This document shows positions 49,573 to 63,592 of a DNA stretch of 64,000 nt, piece by piece (within the stretch, counting starts at the first letter, position 1; each line of letters opens with the position of its first letter). The translations under genes were made by a program, and so were the position numbers. Under the pieces are notes generated by a model. That model worked only from the letters and a program-made list of their open reading frames with translations. It was not told the origin of the DNA and searched no databases. This stretch comes from Ylistrum balloti (taxonomy: Eukaryota), in the NCBI RefSeq assembly GCF_031769215.1, contig NW_026782452.1, forward strand, positions 496,001-560,000, written 5' to 3'.

Positions 49573-50880
49573 TCATGTCCATTGGACCTGTGGATTTGTA
49601 AACATATATTGTATTAAATACTTCATACAACTCCCCATCTCTTCACTTGTGGAAGAATTCAAGACAGGCAAGGCAAGACTCATCATGACCTTGAAGGACT
49701 CCAAAGATGATAAGGTGTGATTAGCCAGCATGGAAGTACGAACTGGCAGGAAATGGTCAGCATCAAGAGCAGTTGACGGGACTGGAAGTAGACTGATACA
49801 CAAAGACATTGATGGAACAATAGCAGTAGGAAGACAAGGTATAGGAACAACTAAGAGCACCTTTTGGAAAAAGGCTGATGCGGAAGAAAGGCATGGTCCT
49901 AAAGGAAATTAGAAATGGTGAGGAAGAACCAAGGCAGGCCAAAGCAGTTGCATTGGGAGCTCAAGGAGCGTGGACAATATGGGATACAGAACCGCATGCA
50001 CTTTCCTGGTCAGAAATCTGGAAGTACCCGCAATTCCAACTGCAATTCCTCCTCCGGTCTGTGTATGACGTGCTACCAACACCAGCAAATCTCCACTTGA
50101 TTGCCGCCTGTGTGGACAGAGAGGAACATTACAGCACATTCTTACCTCTTGTCAGGTGGCCTTAGCACAGGGAAGATATACATGGCGCCACAACCAAGTC
50201 TTAAGGGAGCAGGCAGATATTATGGAAAGGGAAAAAAAGAATAAGGCCACCCAACCAAGGTCCAGACATACACAGATTATGTTTGTGAAGGAAGGTGAGA
50301 CACCAACATCCGCATCACTGCAGAGAACTTCCAGAATTCTTTGTCAGGCAGGAGACTGGAAGCTGGCAGTAGAACTTAATCAGAGACTTACCTTTCCGGA
50401 CATTGTACCAACCAACCTTCGGCCGGATATGGTTCTTTGGTTGTCAACGACAAGAATGGTCATTATCATAGAACTAACAGTTCCATGGGTGGAAAGGTGC
50501 AGTGAAGCACTTGAACGGAAGAGAGGAAAGTACGAAGCATTGCTGATGGAGTGCAGGGAGAAAGGGTGGCAGACTTGCAGCTTTCCGGTCGAGGTGGGAT
50601 GCAGGGGCTTCCCGCACAGTCTGTGTGGAGAATGCTAGCTGAATTGGGAGTGTCAGGCAGGACCAAGAGATCAGCGGTGCAGAGGATGGCCAAGGAAACA
50701 GAGAGATCTTCATGCTGGGTGTGGATGAAGAAAGACTCAAGTAGCTGGACACCCTCCACCAACGCGCAGTGACTGATCATCACTGTGGACCCCCCCATCC
50801 TGAGAGTGTACTGAGCTAGGGGTCAAAACACACAGTCAGGGATGACCTCGACTGAGACGTCGGCGGTGAAGCAGTAGAAA
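49573..50880 (+). mobile_element. 5'-truncated, frameshifted non-LTR retrotransposon with a restriction-like endonuclease (HERO-type)
   Basis: Across frames: QLPISSLVEEFKTGKARL, EVRTGRKWSA, QGAWTIW, FLLRSVYDVLPTPANL, a CCHC knuckle (CRLCGQRGTLQHILTSC), RYTWRHNQVL, and the RLE motifs LRPDMV, IIELTVPW, RKRGKY and PVEVGCRGF. There are internal stops and frameshifts, and the RT core is absent. Confidence 0.85.
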
Positions 50881-51422
50881 CATCTTAGCTGTATTAAGGT
50901 AACTACATGGTTTGGGGGATCAGAGGTACCTTCTGCTAATAACACAATTAGTGTCATTACATATATTTACAGTTAGCCTGACTGGCTACCATCAACCCAG
51001 TGTTAATTTGGATTGTATTCACAGCAGAGTAGATACAGTGTGTACCAAGGGACAATAATGACGTCATTTTAGCGCCATTCTGACCAATGTTACGTCGATC
51101 TTTTCACATCGCCTCAGATAACACACAATAATATCTTCACGTTATTCATCTGATTACTATTTTCAAAGAGCTTTTCCAGCATGTAAACATACTGCGATCA
51201 ATATATGAAAAATGATACCCAGTTAAAATATTCTGACCCCTTAAAATTATTTCTCGTTAGCTATGCTTTGTCAAAAAATTGTCATCAAATACATGAATTA
51301 AATTCATATGTTCATATTATAAAAAATATTTAAAAAAAAAAAGATCTGTGAAACACTATCATTTTTTCTAAAAAAAAAACACGCACTCAGATCAGTTAAT
51401 TTCGCATACCTGAAATGATCGA

Positions 51423-51781
51423 CACGTGTATCGAACATGTGACTGACCAGCCGTTTCTGATGACGTCAACTTACAGTTACGCAGAAATACATGTATTACA
51501 TAAAATTATCATATGAATGGAAATGACATTGTGGTAACAGAAAAAAAATCAAAATGAAATAATGGTGGAAAATGGTTTATAATCGGTGTTGATGTGTGCA
51601 CGTTTTCTAAAGGGCAAGATTCAATTTTTTATTTTTGGTTGCCTTTTCTTAAATAAACCATATTTCTTGGCAAATGTCTTTCTTATAACATTTACTATTT
51701 AAATAAAATTAATTTTTCATTGATCAGTCCACAATTCGCTAGTTGATTAAAATCAGAAATGAGTCATCAAAAATGATCATG

Positions 51782-51816
<35 letters not shown>

Positions 51817-53089
51817 CACTTTTCCAACAAACACTGGCATCCAAAGAGGGATTGATTGGTTTTTTAATTGTATCTGGAGTATGTTTAACACGTAATTTGA
51901 ATGTGTATTAAGAAAAAAATACACCATTTTGCCAATGAAATATTAACACAATATTTAATGGTGAATTGTTTTAATCACTGTTTCTTATTCTTCTCGGAAG
52001 CGTCACATGTTACAGCAACTATCCTGGAGCAAGTCAACGCAGATCAATAGTAAAAATTAGCCGGTCCAAAATAAATAACGGTCCGAAACCTATGTCCAGA
52101 CTAAACTACAAATCAGTATGATGCATTCAATTCTGTAAAACATATTTTCTCCTCCAACGTAGTCTTAGAGGAAAACATCGTGAAATAATTAATTTATTCA
52201 TATATTCTAATGATTTTAGTCATAAAACCATTAAATAAATAAGCATATAAATAAATAGATAAATAGAAAAAATCATGATGATTCTTTTCAATTTCATAAA
52301 ATGAACCCTCTCTAATCTGGCCGGTATTCAATATCGGATTTAATTGTGTGCCGAAAAGTTCAAAGTCATACCGTGATGCTCTGTCCACGTGCCCAAGACA
52401 TATGCCTTAGCAAGGCAACGTATGCTGTCCACGTGCCCGGAAATCACGTTTCCTCACTGACCCAAATTCGCCGACAAATTATGCGCAAACACTATGCGCA
52501 GATGAAATGTTGTTTTAGACGACATGGCGGCTAAGCCTACAGAGCTTATATATGTCTAACATTGGAGTACACCTTACAGGGTTTGAGAGACGAGAGGACG
52601 TTTGAACATCAACAGACATTCAAGTAAGTTTCGTCTGTTCTTTCATTTCTAACATGCTTGTGGTGTTATTATTATAAGACGTTTCGTCCATTTATTTAGG
52701 GGTTTGTTAGTCACGAAGTTTTATTCAATGTATCGGTAGGATACTATTACGTAATAGTTATGAATAAAAACAAATTAAATTTAGTCTTTAGCTCATTATT
52801 GCAACAACTTTAGCATTATATCATTTAGGTCTAGATATCCGAGAGCAGCATTCATTGTGCACCTTTCGCCGTCAGTCGTCATTTAGACCGTCTCGCAATC
52901 ACTGCTCGAGAAATGCGACAAATAATGCGTTTTAAATCAAATTGATATTTCATTGACAAAGGTAATATATTGAATCGACACCAAATTCCCAATGGTCAAT
53001 GATAACGAGAGTAATTATAATAAAACTGACATGATCACTCATGGAATCCGGGAAGCCTGTAAACGTTTCACGTGTCGTCAGTTCACGTG
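51423..53089. promoter_or_regulatory. timeless promoter/enhancer with an E-box cluster and a non-coding exon 1 (about 52510-52623)
   Basis: CACGTG at 51423, 52386, 52430, 53069 and 53084. CACGTT at 51599 and 52445. CRE TGACGTCA at 51461. D-box-like TTACATAA at 51496 and TTACGTAA at 52747. Donor CAA|GTAAGT at 52624. Confidence 0.7.
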
Positions 53090-54049
53090 TGCAGTACATG
53101 TGTACCTGAACTTTTTATACATAACGTAGTGTTTAGATTCTATTGGGCATGTCTGAATCGATGCTGGCTCAGAAATCTGAAGCCTGGATGCAAAAATTAT
53201 TATAATACGAGCCTTTTGTACGTGTATGCAAAGTTGATTATGGATCTGTTACCACATATTAAAAATTACTTAAAAGAAAAAAAGCTTTTTAAAAGCAGGT
53301 TCTGTATATTTCACTGCATTATGTTGTGGCGCAACTGATGGAGTTGGTACACAGCATCAAGTGACATCAACTATGATAAATCAACATGATTTTAAAGCCA
53401 AAAATATGCTATTGTAATAGAGGTTATAATTTCTATCCCTGGACCTCTGCCTTACAAGTCTGACACTCAATAGATCGAGCTAAAGAGAAGTTCTCTCTAT
53501 CTGAGTGGTATGTTGGTGCTAGTTTTTACCAGGGTTACATATTGCACCTGCGGGAAATCACTCATCCTCAAGTTTCCAGGTTGTTCCTTGGCAACAGTCG
53601 AGGAAAATTTGTCATTTGCATGATTAGGAACACTAGATTCAGAAAAAAAGTATGATTTCATGCCACATATTGAGTGCTATGAAGACTTTCAAATAACTTT
53701 GTTTAAAAACATATAGAGTTAGTATAGTTCTACCATAGTGACACATATTATGTTGGAAAATCATGAGCTGATATGAGCTTTGCAGATATATACCCCTTGC
53801 CTTTCTTGATTTCCCAACTAACAAAACATTCAGGTCTTAAGTTCCGATAGTAGAGAAAGAAATTCTACTAACTGTTTCCTGTTTGCATTCATCAATATTT
53901 AAACTTTTTGGATAAATGTGGAAATTACCTTTTTTATTTATTAATACATAGACCTGTTTCACGAAGATTATACTTTTGTCTTGTCCTACTTATTTCTTCA
54001 CTAAGGTTGTGTGAAATGGTACTTTTTTTTTCTGTTGGGAATAACTAGT

Positions 54050-54380: not shown

Positions 54381-55660
54381 CCGATGAAGGGAAGGTGTGA
54401 ACGTTTCAAGTACTGTAGTACTGAACAAAGTATTGATAGTATTGTACTGAAGTACTTCACAAATCGAATTCCTTAAATTTATGCAACAAGCTCTCTGATT
54501 GGCAGAGCCAAGTCTAGATCGATTGTGGGTGGAGCCAGGTGAAAAAATACTGTGCAGACATCGGCATTTTACAAACACTTGACTGTCGCGAGAGGTTAAT
54601 TGGAAGAGTCCAAGTCACAGGTGGCTTCAGATCAGACCTAATTGGGTTGTCCCATTTTTTTCATTCTACACCCAATGATACCTTGCTTTTCCATCGATGG
54701 TACAACGAGAAAACGAAAGTTACTCAGTACTAAACTAATTTACGTACAAAATATATATCAACAGGTTAGATCACTGGGACCGGAGAATTCATAACATCTT
54801 AACAGTGAATATAGTCATATAGTCATTCTGTACTAGTTTTATTTATATATTTATTTTTTTGAAAGGGGGGGGGGGGGAGGGGAGGGGGGGAGGTTGGCTC
54901 AAAATATTTCGGTTTAAGCCCAAGCTCTATTATATGTAACAAAGAATTACGAATTACCTGGGACCTCCTGATATATGCCGATAATTCATACTGCATTAAA
55001 AAATAAAGGAATTCTGTGGTCCCATATATTTTTTATTTTATTTTTTATCTTTCCATCGAAAATTATACATATCCGCAACATGTGAAAAAACTTTGAAGTT
55101 GGTTGGGCGGAATATCTAGAGCATTTACTACTGCAAGTTCCAGAAATTCTGACACAAGTCGGGTATTTGCCCGAAGCCTCTGTCTCATGACATTGAATAC
55201 ATATTCAGTTACGTTGTATTCCGGGGAATAAGGTGGCTGAAAAACCAGGGACACGCCATATTCTTTCAGCATATTTCTTAAAATGCGCTCTCCCTGTCTA
55301 TGGTGATGGAATCCACAATTATCCATCACAACCACATCGCCTTGTACAAAAACAGGATTCCCCATATCGTTCGTATCGGACATAATTTCGTCGAAGAAAA
55401 TTTTGCATACTGTTGCCGTCATCGGACATTTTTCCAGCGATTACTTAGTAATTGTTATGTAACTGATAGTGTACAATAACTCCGCCTACCGGAACAAATT
55501 GGGTGTCAGATCAACTATTCAGGTTGTCTAAACTCCGCCCCCGACCAATCACAGAGGTTGTTGTATACTTGACTCGATTATTTGAATACTTCAATACAAT
55601 AGTATCAATACTTTGTTCAATACTATAGTAAGTGTGTCGTTCACACCTTCCCTTCATCGG
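54381..55660 (-). mobile_element. Internally deleted IS630/Tc1/mariner-superfamily DNA transposon with long TIRs and a DDE_3 C-terminal fragment (D38E)
   Basis: About 140-bp imperfect TIRs beginning CCGATGAAGGGAAGGTGTGAACG, with TA on both flanks (ends uncertain by about 3 bp). The minus ORF 55422-55063 contains VVVMDNCGFHH...FQPPYSPEYNVTE, with 38 residues between D and E. The HTH and first catalytic D are missing. Confidence 0.88.
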
Positions 55661-55809
55661 TAATAAACTATATTATAGCTTTCTTTGTATCAGTGACTAA
55701 TTTTTCATTCATAAATTTTCTTTATTTGTTTGAAATTTCAATTGCAGATCTGTGGCAGATAGCAAATTTGCTTTACTTATTCTCCTGAAGAAAAAATAAT
55801 CCTCTAAAT

Positions 55810-58800
55810 ATGGAGTGGCATATTATGAACGTAGATGGGATAAACAGCCTGTCCAGTAACCTCGGAATGGTGGAGGACGGGGTGTATATTCCCTCCAGTA
55901 ACAGCCAAGGTAATTATAGTAATCACTAAGTATGTATTGTATCTAAGATCTCCTTCCTCCTAATGTTATTCCTAGTATTGTTCCAGTATACATAGATATA
56001 TAACAAAGGTAGAGACATTCTATGATATTAAAGAGAAGTATTAAACTATGTTTTCAAATTTGAATGGCAGTGATTTTTGGGACTCTGATATATAAGTCCT
56101 GGATTCATGCTTTTCATGTGTATATAGCTTTGAAAACACCTTGTATCAGTTAGTCCAACTGGCCATGAATTCCGCATTCAAACACGGGAAAAGAAATAGA
56201 TTTTTATTGCTGAGAATTATTGTTTGAAAATAATCTTATCGAATGTGAAATACAATTTAAATTGAGATAAATTTTCATTTGGCATTAAGTTTGTTATATT
56301 AGCCTACCATCATTAGAGGATAGTGGGCTGACCAAATTGCCCTCTGTCAGTGGTTAGTATCTGGCATCTTGCATCAGTCTGTCCTAAACAGTTCTTGTTG
56401 TCACTATTTTTTGAGAAGTACCAGATCCACAAATTTCATATATAGGTTCCTCTTGTTCCCTATATGTTAACATTGATTGTTGGACTTATCTGAAAAATAA
56501 TTTTTAAGATAAAAGTGACCATCTTTGATTCTGACAGTAATTTGTTTTTATTAGAGGCGGGGTGGTTGGAGGGGGAGGATACTGGAATCAGATTGTTTGT
56601 TTGTCCTTCTGTTCGTAGATGCAAGATGTACCGGCTACTCCTCCTAAATTACTGAATTGATTTCAATGATCCTATACTTTGCATATGTGCGTAAATTATA
56701 TGTTGAGCTACCTTCCCTTTTTCGAAAAGTTATGCCCCAGGTAGACACAGCTCGTCAAAAGGTTTTGTTTGGTGTTTGTTAAACATGAGTCACTCACAGC
56801 CACTGCAGCTTTTTATCAGAGCTATGAATTTGTCTCTATGTTTGGTGTTTGTTAAACATGAGTCACTCACAGCCACTGCGGCTGTTAATTTGTTGGAGCG
56901 TTTTATCAGAGCTATGAATTTGTCTCTATGTTTGGTGTTTGTTAAACATGAGTCACTCACAGCCACTGCAGCTGTTAATTTGTTGGAGCTTTTTATCAGA
57001 GCTATGAATTTGTCTCTATGTTTGGTGTTTGTTAAACATGAGTCACTCACAGCCACTGCAGCTGTTAATTTATGAATTTGTCTCTATGTTTGGTGTTTGT
57101 TAAACATGAGTCACTCACAGCCACTGCAGCTGTTAATTTGTTGGAGCTTTTTATCAGAGCTATGAATTTGTCTCTATGTTTGGTGTTTGTTAAACATGAG
57201 TCACTCACAGCCACTGCGTCTGTTAATTTATGAATTTGTCTCTATGTTTGGTGTTTGTTAAACATGAGTCACTCACAGCCACTGCAGCTTTTTATCAGAG
57301 CTATGAATTTGTCTCTATGTTTGGTGTTTGTTAAACATGAGTCACTCACAGCCACTGCGTCTGTTAATTTATGAATTTGTCTCTATGTTTGGTGTTTGTT
57401 AAACATGAGTCACTCACAGCCACTGCGTCTGTTAATTTATGAATTTGTCTCTATGTTTGGTGTTTGTTAAACATGAGTCACTCACAGCCACTGCAGCTGT
57501 TAATTTGTTGGAGCTTTTTATCAGAGCTATGAATTTGTCTCTATGTTTGGTGTTTGTTAAACATGAGTCACTCACAGCCACTGCAGCTGTTAATTTATGA
57601 ATTTGTCTCTATGTTTGGTGTTTGTTAAACACTGCAGCTTTTTATCAGAGCTATGAATTTGTCTCTATGTTTGGTGTTTGTAAACACTCACAGCCACTGC
57701 AGCTGTTAATTTGCTTTTTATCAGAGCTATGAAGCTTTTTATCAGAGCTATGAATTTGTCTCTATGTTTGGTGTTTGTTAAACATGAGTCACTCACAGCC
57801 ACTGCGTCTGTTAATTTATGAATTTGTCTCTATGTTTGGTGTTTGTTAAACATGAGTCACTCACAGCCACTGCAGCTGTTAATTTGTTGGAGCTTTTTAT
57901 CAGAGCTATGAATTTGTCTCTATGTTTGGTGTTTGTTAAACATGAGTCACTCACAGCCACTGCGTCTGTTAATTTATGAATTTGTCTCTATGTTTGGTGT
58001 TTGTTAAACATGAGTCACTCACAGCCACTGCAGCTGTTAATTTGTTGGAGCTTTTTATCAGAGCTATGAATTTGTCTCTATGTTTGGTGTTTGTTAAACA
58101 TGAGTCACTCACAGCCACTGCGTCTGTTAATTTATGAATTTGTCTCTATGTTTGGTGTTTGTTAAACATGAGTCACTCACAGCCACTCACAGCCATTTGC
58201 TATGTTTGGTGCTGTTAATTTGTTCACAGCCACTGAGCTGTTAATTTATGAATTTGTCTCTATGTTTGGTGTTTGTTAAACATGAGTCACTCACAGCCAC
58301 TGCAGCTGTTAATTTGTTGGAGCTTTTTATCAGAGCTATGAATTTGTCTCTATGTTTGGTGTTTGTTAAACATGAGTCACTCACAGCCACTGCAGCTTTT
58401 TATCAGAGCTATGAATTTGTCTCTATGTTTGGTGTTTGTTAAACATGAGTCACTCACAGCCACTGCGGCTGTTAATTTGTTGGAGCTTTTTATCAGAGCT
58501 ATGAATTTGTCTCTATGTTTGGTGTTTGTTAAACATGAGTCACTCACAGCCACTGCGGCTGTTAATTTGTTGGAGCTTTTTATCAGAGCTATGAATTTGT
58601 CTCTATGTTTGGTGTTTGTTTGTTCACAGCCAACTGTTAATTTATGAATTTGTCTCTATGTTTGGTGTTTGTTAAACATGAGTCACTCACAGCCACTGCA
58701 GCTGTTAATTTGTTGGAGCTTTTTATCAGAGCTATGAATTTGTCTCTATGTTTGGTGTTTGTTAAACATGAGTCACTCACAGCCACTGCAGCTGTTAATT

Positions 58801-61800
58801 TGTTGGAGCTTTTTATCAGAGCTATGAATTTGTCTCTATGTTTGGTGTTTGTTAAACATGAGTCACTCACAGCCACTGCAGCTGTTAATTTGTTGGAGCT
58901 TTTTATCAGAGCTATGAATTTGTCTCTATGTTTGGGGTTTGTTAAACATGAGTCAATGACAGCCACTGCAGCTTTTTATCAGAGCTATGAATTTGTCTCT
59001 CATTCAGCTAGGATGGAAAGATGTCATATGTTATGTAACATATCTATTGTACATGCTTGAAAAACTAGACTGAAAGTTCTTGGATGTTTGAATTAAATGT
59101 TTGTGCCATAACCCAATGAAGCAAAATGATGTAAAATAATATGCAATTATCGCTCGCACTAGAGCCAAACATGGACAAGTGAACTGATCAGGTGATAAAA
59201 TTCCAGATCTCTTACCTAAGTCTGTGTCCCTCACTGTGACCGCATCTTTTTGTAATGATCATTGTGGAAGGTCAAATGTCTTCAAAATGTCCCAAATGAG
59301 CTTATCTATAGGAATGGCAGGATTCATTTCTGTCCCAATTTTATGTGAAGCATCATTTGTTTGGCTGACCATTAAAGGACACAGGGATGGGGCCAAACAG
59401 GGAAATGGAGTGTTGTGTGCTTTGAAATTCAGGATTCCATTTCCTGTAGTTTGTATGAAGCAGTTTTAGCTTGCACTTGTTGTAACATTATATTAAGAGA
59501 ATATTGTGTTGTTTATTTCTCACATATTGATTTTTACTTTTTTTTTTTTTTTGATGGAGACCAATCTTGACAATTTGATGATCCAAACTACAATATCTTG
59601 TCACTCGGTCATAATTTGTACATTTCAAAATTGAGCTCATTTTTATTTGTAGTAATAAACTGTATTTTGATTTTGGTACTACTGCATTGTTAAGTTGCCT
59701 GAGACCTAGGAGGCCATTGGCTTCTTGTTGTTATTATAAACTGATGGATTAAAGGGTCAAGAATGGCTGAAGCCATATTAAGCCCTTTGGCCAAAAGTGA
59801 AAATGGAAAAAATTTAAATAGTTAAATGTCCCGTAAAATAACAGAAAAAGAAAGAAAACTTTCAAATATTTAAATAAATCCAAACTAAATGACATGAAGA
59901 AAAGAAATAAAAGTAAATATACCAGATTTTTCAGGTCTAATGGATCAGTTAGTTCGCTTTTGAGTGTACATATATTTGGACCCTGATGTAAATTTAGTTG
60001 GACCCTTCATGCCTGTGGTCAGGTATCTGCATGTGATCATTTTTTTACTGCAGCAATCCTTGAAGAAAATTTGGAGTTCCTTATGAGAGATAACATGGAC
60101 AAGACCTACAGAAGACTGCTGTTTAATAACAAATTCCCAGAAAAGGTATGTATTTATCATTTCTGTACATATCATTCCTCAAAATTCTGTAAGTGTATAT
60201 TGTAAATGATATTGAATAGAATTAGGTAGTTAAGATTAATTTTTCAATGGTTCATACTTCGCCAAAAGCTTAGGATGTATTTTATAAGGAAGTCATGTAA
60301 TATTTTCAAAGTATATAAGTTTTTCATGATTATATTTAGACCTCAAATTTGAAAGTGCGACGAAAACAAAACCTCTTGAAGAAGGTATCTGTGGTATGCA
60401 ATGCTATATACACTAAGAGAGTGATGTTACAGACATTATATTTACATAATTAATTTCTCAACCAATACCTTTTGTTATCTTTGTATATATTACAAATATT
60501 CATGTGTAATGTGTATACATACAAAATGTATAAGAAATTTGTCAGTCGGATTTACCTGTGCACATTTCAACTGCAGGAACTGGTCCCATTGATCAAGTAC
60601 ATCAGAGATGACCACACAAACCTACAGGAAGCATTGAGGTCAGTCTTCACTACCTTGTTTATCTGCAACTTTCCAACCAATAAGCCCCCTTTATTTTTCA
60701 GAATCACAGGGTTTTCCATAATTTTGTTAGTAGTAGGCTGTGTAGTGAAAGTAGGAGGCTGGCCTGCCGTGTACGTGTAGTCGTGTACGGAACATTATTA
60801 CGGAACTGGATTGGTGTAGGCGGCCAAATGATCAAAGTAGCCGGTCAAATTGACCGGGGACCGGCTCTTATGGAAAACCCTGGATCATTCAAAATAATTG
60901 AAATAGTAAGCTAAGGTAATCCACAAATAAGAATGAATTTTTACATGAGGGGAGGGAGCCTAACAAAAAAGGTTCCATGTTATATACTGTATAAGAATTT
61001 CATACTATTTCAGAGTAAACCCATGGGGTTGATCAAAATTATTGTTTTTACAGATTTATCATTTGAGCTTGGAATATTAGATTAAGGAAATGTTAATGTT
61101 TCAATACTTATGGCAGTGTATCTGAACTACAGATGTAATTGATCAATGTGGGTTTTTATGGAATACCTAAGGTCTTGTGCATATTGCGGTCGTCCTGCAG
61201 TTTAATACTCTTTTCTGATTGGTCAATAAATGCTCCATTTCTTGGTAGTGTATTAAACTAAAATGAATAAGTTGCGACCACTTTTCAATCTGATTAAATA
61301 TTGTAACTTGTAAAATAATTTGGTGCAATTCAAATTCTCATACAGATCTTCTCTAGGCACCTTGAGCCTGAAATTAATGTTCTGTTTAGATCAATATCCA
61401 AATGGTCCATCATGAAAATCTTGTGTTTGATCCTGATTAGATATTCAAATGTTTTCTGATCGTGCTGAAAAATGCTATCGATAACAAGGACAGATCTGAA
61501 AAATATTGAAGCCCTTGTTTGATACAGGAATTTTCTGAATGTGCTGAATGATGAAGCAAATCCACTGCAATGACATCCACAGAAGGATTGGCTTTACTTG
61601 GCAATATCAATATTTACAGGGATAAAAAGAGGAAACTTACAACAAATTGCATCCATATTCCTGATCTCTTTTGAACGTACTTTCAGATTATGGAATATAC
61701 AATTAAATGTAACCAATGTTGTAGATTGATGATCCTGTTGACAAATCCTGTGGAGTATGACTATGACACAAATGAAAGGACCAAACCACCATGGGCTATT

Positions 61801-63592
61801 GAGCTTGAGAGTGCAATCAAAGATACTGTTGAAAAATGCTTCTGTAAAACATTTGTGACAGCTATCGTAGAGGAAATGAAACTTCTTCTAGAAGAGGTAT
61901 TTATGATTATGATTCAACACATTACATTTATTGTATATTGTAGTTATATGTCTTCATCATTATATTGGGGGCAGTATATGACATACCCCTATTCATATCT
62001 CTCCTGTCACGTCACGTTCTATCCCATTCTGTTCTGTTCCATCATATCTTGAGAACTTCTCAACAGATTTAGTTCAGATTTACTCCATAGCATTGTAACA
62101 TCATGTTCTATACCTTATAAAGATGATCATATTTCTTCATGGTGAAGGGGTCAAAGGTCACATTGGATATTTTCTGCAGATTTATCAAACAATGATACTT
62201 GCATACTTCAGAGTGAGGGCATTTCATCCATACAGACATTTTCTGTTTTATCATTTCTAACCTGTGAATTTGTGACTGATTTTATTGTGTATATTGTATG
62301 ATGACTAACAGTGTTTACCTAGGACAAGATTTCAACTAAACCTGTCAAACAAACAAACAAATTTATGGCATTCCAGGGCTCTCACACCCCATTTTGGGAC
62401 TGGGGCCCTTAGAATCGGGGAAAAATAATGGTGTTTTCCTTAGAATTGGGAAAACTTCATGTCTAGATTGGGGAAAAAGAATATCAACCCCAAATCTGGC
62501 AGATGGAGAGCCCTACATTATGGATTGTCTGTTGTCCATCAGCCTTTTCCTTTGAAATCTTTAGCTTTCTGAAATATGCAACATTTTGATCCCACTGGTT
62601 GTATGATACTATTCTGTAAGCCACCTCCTACCATCAAGAGACCTAGAGTCAAGATATTGGCTAGAAGCATTCCAATTCTTATCAAGAAGCAAATGGCACA
62701 ACAATTCTAATGATTGAAACCTAGCATAATGAGATGAATGACTGTAAAATTTTGAACCATTTTCTTTGATGTTCTCAATAGGAAGGTATATAAAGGTCTT
62801 AATAACTGATGAAGAATTTCTTCTGACTATCCAGAAGGCCAAGGGCCATTTTATCAGGATATTAGCATAAAGTTGGATGAATGACCGTCCAATTTTTTTT
62901 TTGAATGAATGATCATGACTCATTCAAATCAATATTTTTGAGCAATTTTTTCTAGTAATCGAGAGACCAAGATTCCTGATGTTTGGCCATTTGATAGCAT
63001 GCTGAAGTGAAGGACTTTCAAATTCAATGTTCAAATCAATTACTTAGTTTAGTTGTTATCGTCTCAGAAATCAGACCTGTCAAAATCTTTGATTTCATCT
63101 GAACAAGAAATTGACTATCAGATTATTTGACTGTGTTACTGGAATAAAATCACTTGGGTTTGTAATACACACAAATAACCCTAGTCATTTTAAACTCACA
63201 TGAACAGCATTCTGTTTTGTTAAAGATCCTATTTTATTGAATTTCTAATTCTCATTATGAATTTTGTTAATATAGATCTGTAACAGTCGAGCAAAACATG
63301 TTGCTAGAATATTTAATGTACACATGTAGATGATTTTCTTTACGGCATTATGAATTAAACTGCTCAATACAGTGCCATGTTAGTTGTGATTTTTAACTTA
63401 CATTTCATTCCGACTTATCTGTTGGGAGATTTCTTCATCTTTATTTATCATTTTACAGTCTGGACCATACAGCCTAACGGACGACGGAGTCGCGGCAATC
63501 AACAAATGTCTTTTCATGATTCGTAATCTTCTATACATCAAGGAGTCCAGTCCTGACCAGTCCACCATAATGCAGCACGTTGAGCGAGTGAA
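55810..63592 (+). CDS. tim: Timeless, Drosophila/TIM1-type circadian clock protein; first 5 coding exons, gene continues beyond the window
   Basis: Exons 55810-55909, 60054-60145, 60577-60638, 61725-61896, 63459-63592, all GT-AG with matching phases. Spliced protein: MEWHIMNVDGINSLSSNLGMVEDGVYIPSSNSQAILEENLEFLMRDNMDKTYRRLLFNNKFPEKELVPLIKYIRDDHTNLQEALRLMILLTNPVEYDY...TAIVEEMKLLLEESGPYSLTDDGVAAINKCLFMIRNLLYIKE. This is colinear with recalled Drosophila TIM (MDW...SSLGCLEGDTYV...AILEE...RTFRR...DLIPLL...IRILVNLTVPVE...VVEYMKHILE...INNCLLLLRNILHIPE). Confidence 0.88.
56765..58997. repeat. Modular 90/73/68-bp satellite in timeless intron 2
   Basis: Core ATGAATTTGTCTCTATGTTTGGTGTTTGTTAAACATGAGTCACTCACAGCCACTGC with variable tails. 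About 27 monomers. It yields the 30-aa periodic ORFs. Confidence 0.97.
60707..60882. mobile_element. 176-bp MITE, copy 2
   Basis: TIRs CAGGGTTTTCCATAA ... TTATGGAAAACCCTG. Same length and orientation as copy 1, with a handful of substitutions. Confidence 0.85.
62374..62515. mobile_element. About 140-bp MITE-like element with CAGGGCTCTC termini
   Basis: Left end CAGGGCTCTC. The right end GAGAGCCCTA is a 9/10 inverted match. Confidence 0.5.

What the first reader, a model, noticed from the sequence alone, without database searches (positions are those of the whole stretch)
51423..53089. Circadian-style cis-regulatory cluster around the timeless first exon
Seen: five CACGTG in 1.7 kb, against about seven spotted by eye in the other 62 kb or so (rough expectation about 1 per 10 kb if GC is about 35%). 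Two lie in a duplicated 14-mer CTGTCCACGTGCCC 44 bp apart, with CACGTT next to them. Two more lie 15 bp apart in intron 1. An E-box, CRE and D-box module spans 51423-51503. Established: CLOCK:CYCLE/BMAL1 drives Drosophila tim through canonical and non-canonical E-boxes, and PAR-bZIP/VRI factors bind TTA(C/T)GTAA. Inference: this gene is a cycling core-clock component. The motifs independently support the TIM1 call.
Basis: partly seen in the sequence, partly recalled or inferred. Interest (0 to 1): 0.7.

Follow-up and report, generated by a model that had tools for sequence, protein, structure and literature searches.

The report
Conserved E-box cluster at scallop timeless

Summary
Five CACGTG sit at exactly the stated coordinates and seven elsewhere in the window. 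The twin 14-mer occurs nowhere else in the 648-Mb genome. The excess survives correction for the locally undepleted CpG (0.30 expected; 0 of 5000 shuffles reach 5).

Two corrections:
- Window 51225-52101 is a copy of a dispersed repeat (at least 40 copies). The D-box-like 8-mer belongs to the repeat consensus. The E-box and CRE are changes private to this copy.
- If each tight pair counts as one local duplication, clustering within the window is not significant (P 0.18).

The decisive support comes from other species. In Mizuhopecten yessoensis and Pecten maximus, the 1.2 kb around the conserved donor of non-coding exon 1 of the orthologous gene also holds 3 and 4 CACGTG (0.2 expected, P at most 0.0013). 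This includes a conserved E-box-N9-CACGTT unit and a shared intron-1 E-box.

The gene is Drosophila-type TIM (8DD7 2.7e-75; human TIMELESS 1.1e-18). The timeout-type paralogue has no CACGTG in the 9.9 kb upstream.

Cycling and CLOCK:BMAL binding are untested, because no RNA run was available. The scan had already confirmed the gene itself (s1-254215). Verdict: a new member of a known kind, of moderate interest.

The parts
51225..52101 (.). Copy of an unclassified dispersed repeat (at least 40 copies, 66-80% identical).
   Evidence: Own-genome DNA search: query positions 226-1102 of 51000-53300 match 74 other places. Alignment with 20 copies.
51423..51428 (.). CACGTG inside the repeat copy. The family consensus is CATGTG. 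It is followed after 7 nt by CATGTG.
   Evidence: Of the other 20 copies, 16 have TG and 0 have CG at this site. Genome-wide, the CACGTG form in this context is a rare minority.
51461..51468 (.). TGACGTCA (CRE-like) inside the repeat copy. The family consensus is TGACATCA.
   Evidence: Of the other 20 copies, 15 have CA and 0 have CG. Not conserved in the other scallops.
51496..51503 (-). D-box-like TTACATAA, part of the repeat consensus.
   Evidence: Present in most aligned copies.
52381..52394 (.). 14-mer copy 1, CTGTCCACGTGCCC, with upstream E-box 1 (52386-52391).
   Evidence: An E-box at a comparable place in M. yessoensis (L050:6426) and P. maximus (L051:5833).
52425..52450 (.). 14-mer copy 2 with E-box 2 (52430-52435), a 9-nt spacer and E'-box CACGTT (52445-52450).
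   Evidence: The same CACGTG-N9-CACGTT unit aligns in M. yessoensis (L050:6457-6477). It has decayed to TACATG...CATGAT in P. maximus.
52458..52468 (-). RORE-like AATTTGGGTCA (read on the - strand).
   Evidence: Motif scan. Not conserved in the other scallops, so weak.
52482..52530 (+). Conserved core-promoter block: two TGCGCA (52482, 52495) and CGACATGGCGG (52520-52530). These are NRF1/EWG-like and YY1-like by resemblance only.
   Evidence: Invariant in the three-scallop alignment. blastn: window 52473-52535 matches L050 6490-6553 at 79%.
52500..52624 (+). Inferred non-coding exon 1 of timeless. The 5' end is approximate. The donor GTAAGT starts at 52625.
   Evidence: The donor and the last ~45 nt are conserved in three genomes. 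The 5'UTR of a related transcript (L052) aligns over nt 1-95 and leaves the genomic sequence at the donor.
52676..52688 (.). Conserved intron-1 block AAGACGTTTCGTC, of unknown role.
   Evidence: Kept in all three scallops.
52746..52755 (.). Perfect palindromic PAR-bZIP/D-box consensus ATTACGTAAT in intron 1.
   Evidence: The only TTACGTAA in the window. In unique DNA. Not conserved in the other scallops.
53069..53102 (.). Intron-1 E-box pair: TTCACGTGT at 53067 and 53082 (CACGTG 53069 and 53084, 9-nt spacer), then CATGTG at 53097.
   Evidence: P. maximus has TCACGTGTCG...CACGTG at L051:6568/6591 at a similar distance from the donor (+547/+570 against +444/+459). It is absent in M. yessoensis.
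55748..55909 (+). Exon 2 of timeless: acceptor ttgcag|A, start codon at 55810 (MEWHIMNVDG...), donor AAG|GTAATT.
   Evidence: It translates to residues 1-33 of P0001. It is 75-86% identical to the ATG exons of L050 and L051.

Best explanation
The unique DNA from about 52380 to 53100 is the promoter and first-intron enhancer of the scallop's Drosophila-type timeless (tim1) gene.

Layout:
- Two CACGTG E-boxes plus a CACGTT E'-box lie about 50-120 bp upstream of the start of a short non-coding exon 1.
- A second pair of E-boxes lies about 450 bp into intron 1.

The most likely mechanism is the canonical one. The bHLH-PAS heterodimer CLOCK:BMAL1 (CYCLE) binds these sites, probably cooperatively at the paired sites. 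It drives rhythmic tim transcription, which the negative-limb proteins then repress.

Shown here:
- The motifs exist and are in non-random excess.
- They are conserved at the orthologous place in two other pectinid genera.
- The gene is of TIM1 type.
- Exon 1 and its donor are conserved.

Inferred:
- Which factor binds.
- That transcription cycles.
- The exact transcription start.

The fifth E-box (51423), the CRE and the TTACATAA lie in an old transposon copy about 1 kb further upstream. At most they are a lineage-specific addition.
For: 1. Excess over local composition: 5 observed against 0.30 expected, with 0 of 5000 shuffles reaching 5. The unique 1.2 kb around the donor holds 4 against 0.20 expected.
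2. Replication at a place fixed beforehand by homology: M. yessoensis has 3 CACGTG against 0.21 expected (P 0.0013), and P. maximus has 4 against 0.25 (0 of 3000 shuffles). Both counts are within 600 bp of the conserved exon-1 donor, while flanking DNA is no longer alignable.
3. The CACGTG-N9-CACGTT unit is conserved in register between Y. balloti and M. yessoensis. The intronic TCACGTGTCG is shared with P. maximus.
4. Gene identity: P0001 has Pfam TIMELESS and TIMELESS_C. Drosophila TIM 8DD7_B scores 2.7e-75 against 1.1e-18 for human TIMELESS.
5. Controls: the timeout-type paralogue has 0 CACGTG in 9.9 kb upstream. Other CpG-rich stretches of the window hold 0.19 per kb against 3.2 per kb here. 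The 52102-53300 stretch is single-copy.
6. Literature: Drosophila tim has an upstream and a first-intron E-box enhancer bound by CLK:CYC (PMC11009632). A mussel per enhancer with one CACGTG and two CACGTT is activated by mussel CLOCK+BMAL, and a CACGTT is essential (bioRxiv 10.1101/2025.10.08.681125). Oyster CgTim mRNA covaries with CgPeriod in LD and DD (rho 0.84-0.85; PMC5224872).
Against: - There are no expression or binding data for any scallop tim. No RNA run holds this locus.
- CACGTG is also the site of USF, MYC/MAX, MITF/TFE, Mlx/MondoA and HES/CWO-type factors. The upstream flanks (CCACGTGC) are not those reported as preferred by NPAS2/CLOCK:BMAL1.
- The pair spacing is 9 nt, not the 6-7 nt of the fly/mouse E1-E2 element (PMC2242825). 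N9 is not enriched genome-wide.
- Conservation is partial. M. yessoensis lacks the intron pair, and P. maximus has lost E-box 2 and the E'-box.
- Both tight pairs in this species look like small local duplications. Counted once each, the in-window clustering is not significant.
- The transcription start rests on a modest alignment (52% mean column identity) to a transcript of an unidentified relative.
Confidence: 0.6

Rival explanations
1. The E-boxes are real and selected, but they serve ubiquitous or metabolic bHLH-ZIP factors (USF, MAX partners, MITF/TFE, Mlx/MondoA) or HES/CWO-type repressors. They would set the basal, tissue-specific or stress/light-induced level of tim rather than CLOCK:BMAL-driven cycling.
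For: CACGTG is the shared class-B site. The region is a CpG-undepleted, promoter-like island. The upstream flanks CCACGTGC and the 9-nt spacing do not fit the fly/mouse E1-E2 model (PMC2242825). N9 pairs are no commoner than N8 or N10 in the genome.
Against: Other CpG-undepleted stretches in the window, and the timeout-type paralogue, lack such clusters. The gene is the classical CLK:CYC target. A conserved CACGTT partner is typical of clock elements and was the essential site in the mussel per enhancer (bioRxiv 10.1101/2025.10.08.681125).
Confidence: 0.25
2. A composite light- or signal-responsive module (E-box + CRE + D-box), as the first reader proposed for 51423-51503, contributes to tim regulation after being recruited from a transposon copy.
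For: The window copy alone has changed CATGTG to CACGTG and TGACATCA to TGACGTCA. It lies in CpG-undepleted DNA about 1 kb upstream of the start. A second TGACGTCA lies in unique DNA at 51059. CRTC/CREB input to Drosophila tim is described (PMC5005998, abstract only read).
Against: It lies in a dispersed repeat. The D-box-like 8-mer is the family consensus. This copy gained 8 CpGs in all, so the two motif-creating changes may simply reflect life in unmethylated DNA. No CRE or D-box sits at the comparable place in the other two scallops.
Confidence: 0.1
3. Chance plus composition: small local duplications in a CpG-rich promoter happened to multiply a CACGTG, and there is no function.
For: Both tight pairs look like duplications. 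With pairs counted once, P is 0.18. Roughly 140-147 CACGTG pairs exist in the genome at each exact spacing tested.
Against: There is an independent excess at the homologous place in two other genera, and E-N9-E' is conserved in register. The local shuffles control for composition.
Confidence: 0.05

Closest known systems
Drosophila melanogaster timeless regulatory DNA (upstream E-box/TER enhancer plus first-intron E-box enhancer, bound by CLK:CYC)
   Same: Orthologous gene type (TIM1). Canonical CACGTG boxes with an E-box-like partner just upstream of the start, and further canonical E-box(es) in the first intron (PMC11009632).
   Different: There is no sequence homology of the non-coding DNA. 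In the scallop the boxes are within about 120 bp of the inferred start and the intron site is a pair. No PERR/TER elements were identified. Function is untested.
E1-E2 / EE' tandem circadian element of fly and mammalian clock genes (per, tim, vri, Pdp1, cwo; Per1/2, Dbp, Tef)
   Same: A canonical E-box with a second E-box-like site (CACGTT/AACGTG) close by, in either orientation (PMC2242825, PMC2254435).
   Different: The spacer here is 9 nt (15 bp centre to centre), not 6-7 nt. The flanks differ from the modelled consensus. N9 is not enriched genome-wide.
Bivalve clock-gene E-boxes: oyster CgPeriod (-86), CgCry2 (-36) and CgCry1 (-274); the Bathymodiolus per upstream enhancer block 118
   Same: Same animal class. 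CACGTG close to the start. A CACGTG plus CACGTT combination, conserved among related species and activated by mussel CLOCK+BMAL in S2 cells (PMC5224872; bioRxiv 10.1101/2025.10.08.681125).
   Different: Those are per and cry genes. For tim, the oyster 5'UTR could not be mapped, so no tim promoter was described (PMC5224872). No reporter data exist for the scallop element.

Membership tests
CLOCK:BMAL1/CYCLE-responsive circadian E-box enhancer | One or more CACGTG (or CACGTT) boxes in promoter-proximal or intronic DNA of the target gene, in excess of chance | tested here: met
   4 in the unique 1.2 kb against 0.20 expected; 5 in 1.67 kb against 0.30.
CLOCK:BMAL1/CYCLE-responsive circadian E-box enhancer | Evolutionary conservation of the boxes at the orthologous locus | tested here: met
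   M. yessoensis has 3 and P. maximus 4 CACGTG within 600 bp of the conserved donor (P at most 0.0013). E-N9-E' is in register in two species. Conservation is partial.
CLOCK:BMAL1/CYCLE-responsive circadian E-box enhancer | Tandem E1-E2 arrangement with a 6-7 nt spacer | tested here: not met
   Spacers are 9 nt (twice) and 38 nt in Y. balloti, and 17 nt in the P. maximus intron pair. The only 7-nt case (51423 CACGTG-N7-CATGTG) is repeat-borne.
CLOCK:BMAL1/CYCLE-responsive circadian E-box enhancer | Binding or activation by CLOCK:BMAL1 and repression by the negative limb | not testable with these tools
   Needs ChIP or reporter assays.
CLOCK:BMAL1/CYCLE-responsive circadian E-box enhancer | Rhythmic transcription of the linked gene | not testable with these tools
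   No RNA run holds the locus. Only the oyster analogy is available (PMC5224872).
Drosophila-type TIMELESS (TIM1) gene | TIMELESS N-terminal and TIMELESS_C/PAB domains; closer to Drosophila TIM than to TIMEOUT/mammalian TIMELESS | tested here: met
   PF04821 1.1e-10 and PF05029 7.4e-10. 8DD7_B scores 2.7e-75 against 1.1e-18 for 7PFO_K. A separate timeout-type locus exists.
PAR-bZIP/VRI D-box and REV-ERB/ROR RORE clock elements | Consensus site that is conserved at the locus | tested here: not met
   ATTACGTAAT (52746) and AATTTGGGTCA (52458, - strand) exist in unique DNA. They have no counterpart in the other scallops. TTACATAA (51496) is the repeat consensus.

The most novel reading that the evidence does not exclude
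The two-part layout of tim control (a promoter-proximal E/E' cluster plus a first-intron E-box 'shadow' enhancer) is shared by scallops and flies. Either it was inherited from the protostome ancestor or it arose twice under the same constraint. Scallops would use a 15-bp centre-to-centre E-E' unit in place of the 12-13 bp unit of flies and mammals. This would give a first defined cis-element with which to ask whether the same enhancer reads circadian and tidal time in a bivalve.
Probability: 0.2. Interest if true: 0.55.

Novelty: new member of a known kind. Interest (0 to 1): 0.36.

Why it matters
Work on bivalve clocks, including the question of whether one set of clock genes runs at both daily and tidal periods, has lacked defined cis-elements for tim. 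The oyster study could not even map the tim 5'UTR (PMC5224872).

This locus offers a short, conserved, single-copy promoter fragment (about 250 bp) and an intronic pair. Both can go straight into the CLOCK+BMAL reporter assay already working for a mussel per enhancer.

It also shows that about a fifth of the apparent signal, and the whole 'three-element module', came from a transposon copy. That is a useful caution for motif-based promoter reading in repeat-rich mollusc genomes.

Tried and rejected
1. The twin 14-mer as a remnant of the 46-bp satellite on C353/C379, whose unit carries CTGTCCACGTGACC: the flanks are unrelated, so it is a coincidence.
2. The 9-nt spacing as a genome-wide composite element: E-N8-E 139, E-N9-E 146 and E-N10-E 147 pairs, so there is no enrichment.
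3. RNA evidence: the run search returned one DNA-like holder and no RNA run.
4. Reaching oyster or mussel TIM for wider footprinting: neither the single-protein nor the profile word search went beyond Pectinidae. The exon search of the representative library returned only the gene's own product.
5. Pfam on single exons gave nothing. The six-frame TIMELESS scan of the genome missed this gene and found only the timeout-type locus.
6. Typing the cry-family gene that has an upstream E-box cluster: one exon did not discriminate CRY types.
7. The TATA-like TATATAT at 52547 as the TATA box: it probably lies inside exon 1, judged by the related transcript.
Exons were searched singly by reference, and the full-length protein used (P0001) is the database's own record.

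Full report
**Observation**

The window is G000:C595:496001-560000.
- CACGTG occurs 12 times, five of them at 51423, 52386, 52430, 53069 and 53084, exactly as reported. Whole-window shuffles expect 4.5.
- CTGTCCACGTGCCC is duplicated 44 bp apart. These two copies are its only exact occurrences in the 648-Mb genome.
- CACGTT follows the second copy after 9 nt. The intronic pair is also separated by 9 nt.

**Is it more than chance?**

The stretch 51000-53000 is not CpG-depleted: observed/expected is 1.2-1.3, against 0.47 for the window. That inflates any CpG-containing hexamer.
- Shuffles that keep the local dinucleotide content still expect only 0.30 CACGTG in 51423-53089, and none of 5000 reaches five. 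CACGTG is the commonest CpG hexamer there.
- Other CpG-undepleted stretches of the window carry 2 CACGTG in 10.5 kb, against 4 in 1.25 kb here.
- A scan statistic for 12 random sites gives P 0.0016 for five in 1667 bp.
- Both tight pairs look like small local duplications. Counted once each, the clustering is unremarkable (P 0.18).
- About 140-147 CACGTG pairs exist genome-wide at each exact spacing tested.

The in-window statistics alone are therefore suggestive, not decisive.

**A dispersed repeat accounts for part of the finding**

A search of the whole genome with 51000-53300 shows two things:
- 51225-52101 belongs to a dispersed repeat, with 74 further matching places at 66-80% identity.
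- 52102-53300 is single-copy.

In an alignment with 20 other copies:
- The D-box-like TTACATAA is the family consensus.
- The E-box position reads CATGTG: 16 copies have TG and none CG.
- The CRE position reads TGACATCA: 15 copies have CA and none CG.

True ancestral CpGs of the family show the expected CG/TG/CA mixture, so the two motif CpGs are derived in this copy. The copy has gained 8 CpGs in all. Genome-wide, the CACGTG form in this repeat context is a rare minority. It could be a lineage-specific recruitment, but nothing shows that.

**The gene**

- Exon 2 (55748-55909) starts the reading frame at 55810 with MEWHIMNVDG.
- An exon ORF searched by reference (61690-62052) returned one protein, P0001. 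It is the database record "protein timeless-like [Ylistrum balloti]" and is this gene's own product.
- P0001 has Pfam TIMELESS and TIMELESS_C.
- It matches Drosophila TIM (8DD7_B, 2.7e-75) far better than human TIMELESS (7PFO_K, 1.1e-18).
- The only other TIMELESS-domain locus (C509, with a 99.6% identical copy at the end of C224) is timeout-type: 5MQI 4.8e-16 against 0.62 for Drosophila TIM.

This agrees with the earlier follow-up s1-254215.

**Phylogenetic footprinting**

Orthologues were found in Mizuhopecten yessoensis (P0002, 67% identity) and Pecten maximus (P0003, 64%). Their loci were fetched with 10 kb upstream (L050 and L051). Non-coding DNA is almost unalignable, apart from one block just upstream of a conserved GTAAGT donor about 3.2-4 kb before the ATG. 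Invariant features of that block are two TGCGCA, CGACATGGCGG, the last ~45 nt before the donor, and the donor itself.

The 154-nt 5'UTR of a fourth relative's transcript (L052, Logan SRR19746223; protein P0004) aligns to this block over its first 95 nt. It departs from the genomic sequence at the donor and leaves 59 nt before the ATG, against 62 nt in exon 2 here. The block is therefore a non-coding exon 1, about 52500-52624 in the window. Its 5' end is only approximate.

CACGTG within 600 bp of the conserved donor:

| Species | Observed | Expected (local shuffles) | Shuffle result | Positions relative to the donor |
|---|---|---|---|---|
| Y. balloti | 4 | 0.20 | 0 of 3000 reach it | -239, -195 (E' -180), +444, +459 |
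| M. yessoensis | 3 | 0.21 | P 0.0013 | -310, -207, -176 (E' -234, -161) |
| P. maximus | 4 | 0.25 | 0 of 3000 reach it | -323, -188, +547, +570 |

- CACGTG-N9-CACGTT aligns in register between Y. balloti and M. yessoensis.
- In P. maximus the same positions read TACATG...CATGAT, consistent with CpG decay.
- The first intronic box with its flank (TCACGTGTCG) is shared by Y. balloti and P. maximus. M. yessoensis has no intronic box.
- The identical 14-mers of Y. balloti have dissimilar counterparts in M. yessoensis, so this species probably duplicated or homogenised its upstream boxes.
- The timeout-type paralogue has no CACGTG in the 9.9 kb upstream of its early TIMELESS exon.

**Other clock-type motifs**

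- a perfect PAR-bZIP site, ATTACGTAAT (52746-52755), the only TTACGTAA in the window;
- a RORE-like AATTTGGGTCA (52458-52468, - strand).

Neither these nor any CRE is kept in the other scallops, so I give them little weight.

**Mechanism**

The best reading (confidence 0.6) is a CLOCK:BMAL1/CYCLE-responsive promoter plus a first-intron enhancer of tim1. The arguments for it are:
- the gene's identity;
- the conserved E/E' combination;
- the parallel with Drosophila tim, which has upstream and first-intron E-box enhancers (PMC11009632);
- the mussel per enhancer, which holds one CACGTG and two CACGTT, is activated by mussel CLOCK+BMAL, and needs a CACGTT (bioRxiv 10.1101/2025.10.08.681125);
- the covariation of oyster CgTim with CgPeriod in LD and DD (PMC5224872).

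The arguments against are:
- no expression or binding data exist, and no RNA run was found;
- the spacing is 9 nt rather than the 6-7 nt of the E1-E2 element (PMC2242825), and N9 is not enriched genome-wide;
- the flanks are uninformative;
- conservation is partial.

The main rival (0.25) is that the same boxes serve USF, MAX, TFE or HES-type factors.

**Novelty**

E-box control of tim is textbook in flies. In bivalves, E-boxes have been reported for per and cry genes, but the oyster tim 5'UTR could not be mapped (PMC5224872). I found no description of a bivalve tim promoter in the searches run. This is a new member of a known kind. It is useful as a ready-made reporter fragment but not surprising.

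Noticed in passing
G000:C229:72360-73558 (L064:2360-3558): Five CACGTG in 1.2 kb of CpG-undepleted DNA, including CACGTG-TTTAACGTG-CACGTG. They lie 5.7-6.9 kb upstream of the first coding exon of a cryptochrome/photolyase-family gene. This could be a second clock-gene E-box cluster in this genome. The gene type and promoter assignment are unresolved.
   Followed up: partly
G000:C353:114229-119395 and C379:74276-77006 (L016): A 46-bp satellite whose unit carries CTGTCCACGTGACC, one mismatch from the tim 14-mer. The flanks are unrelated, so the likeness is coincidental.
   Followed up: yes
window 51225-52101: This old repeat copy, sitting in CpG-undepleted DNA, has 8 CpGs that the family consensus lacks. 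Among them are the changes that create CACGTG, TGACGTCA and CACGTT (51599).
   Followed up: partly
window 52676-52688: AAGACGTTTCGTC, about 55 nt into tim intron 1, is kept in all three scallop genera. Its role is unknown.
   Followed up: no
window 55063-55422 (-): A DDE_3 (Tc1/mariner-type) transposase remnant (Pfam 7e-13) inside tim intron 1.
   Followed up: no
window 56776-59060: A long tandem repeat in tim intron 2. It produces the repeated MNLSLCLVFVKHESLTATAAVNL ORFs on both strands.
   Followed up: no
window 49878-50800: GC-rich, CpG-depleted ORFs (RYTWRHNQVL... ELTVPWE...). They look like the tail of a retroelement directly upstream of the tim promoter island. Pfam gave no hit for one of them.
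   Followed up: no
G000:C509:2181675-2181827 and C224:3655850-3656002: The timeout-type TIMELESS locus is present twice at 99.6% identity. One copy is at a contig end, so it is probably a haplotig or assembly duplicate.
   Followed up: partly
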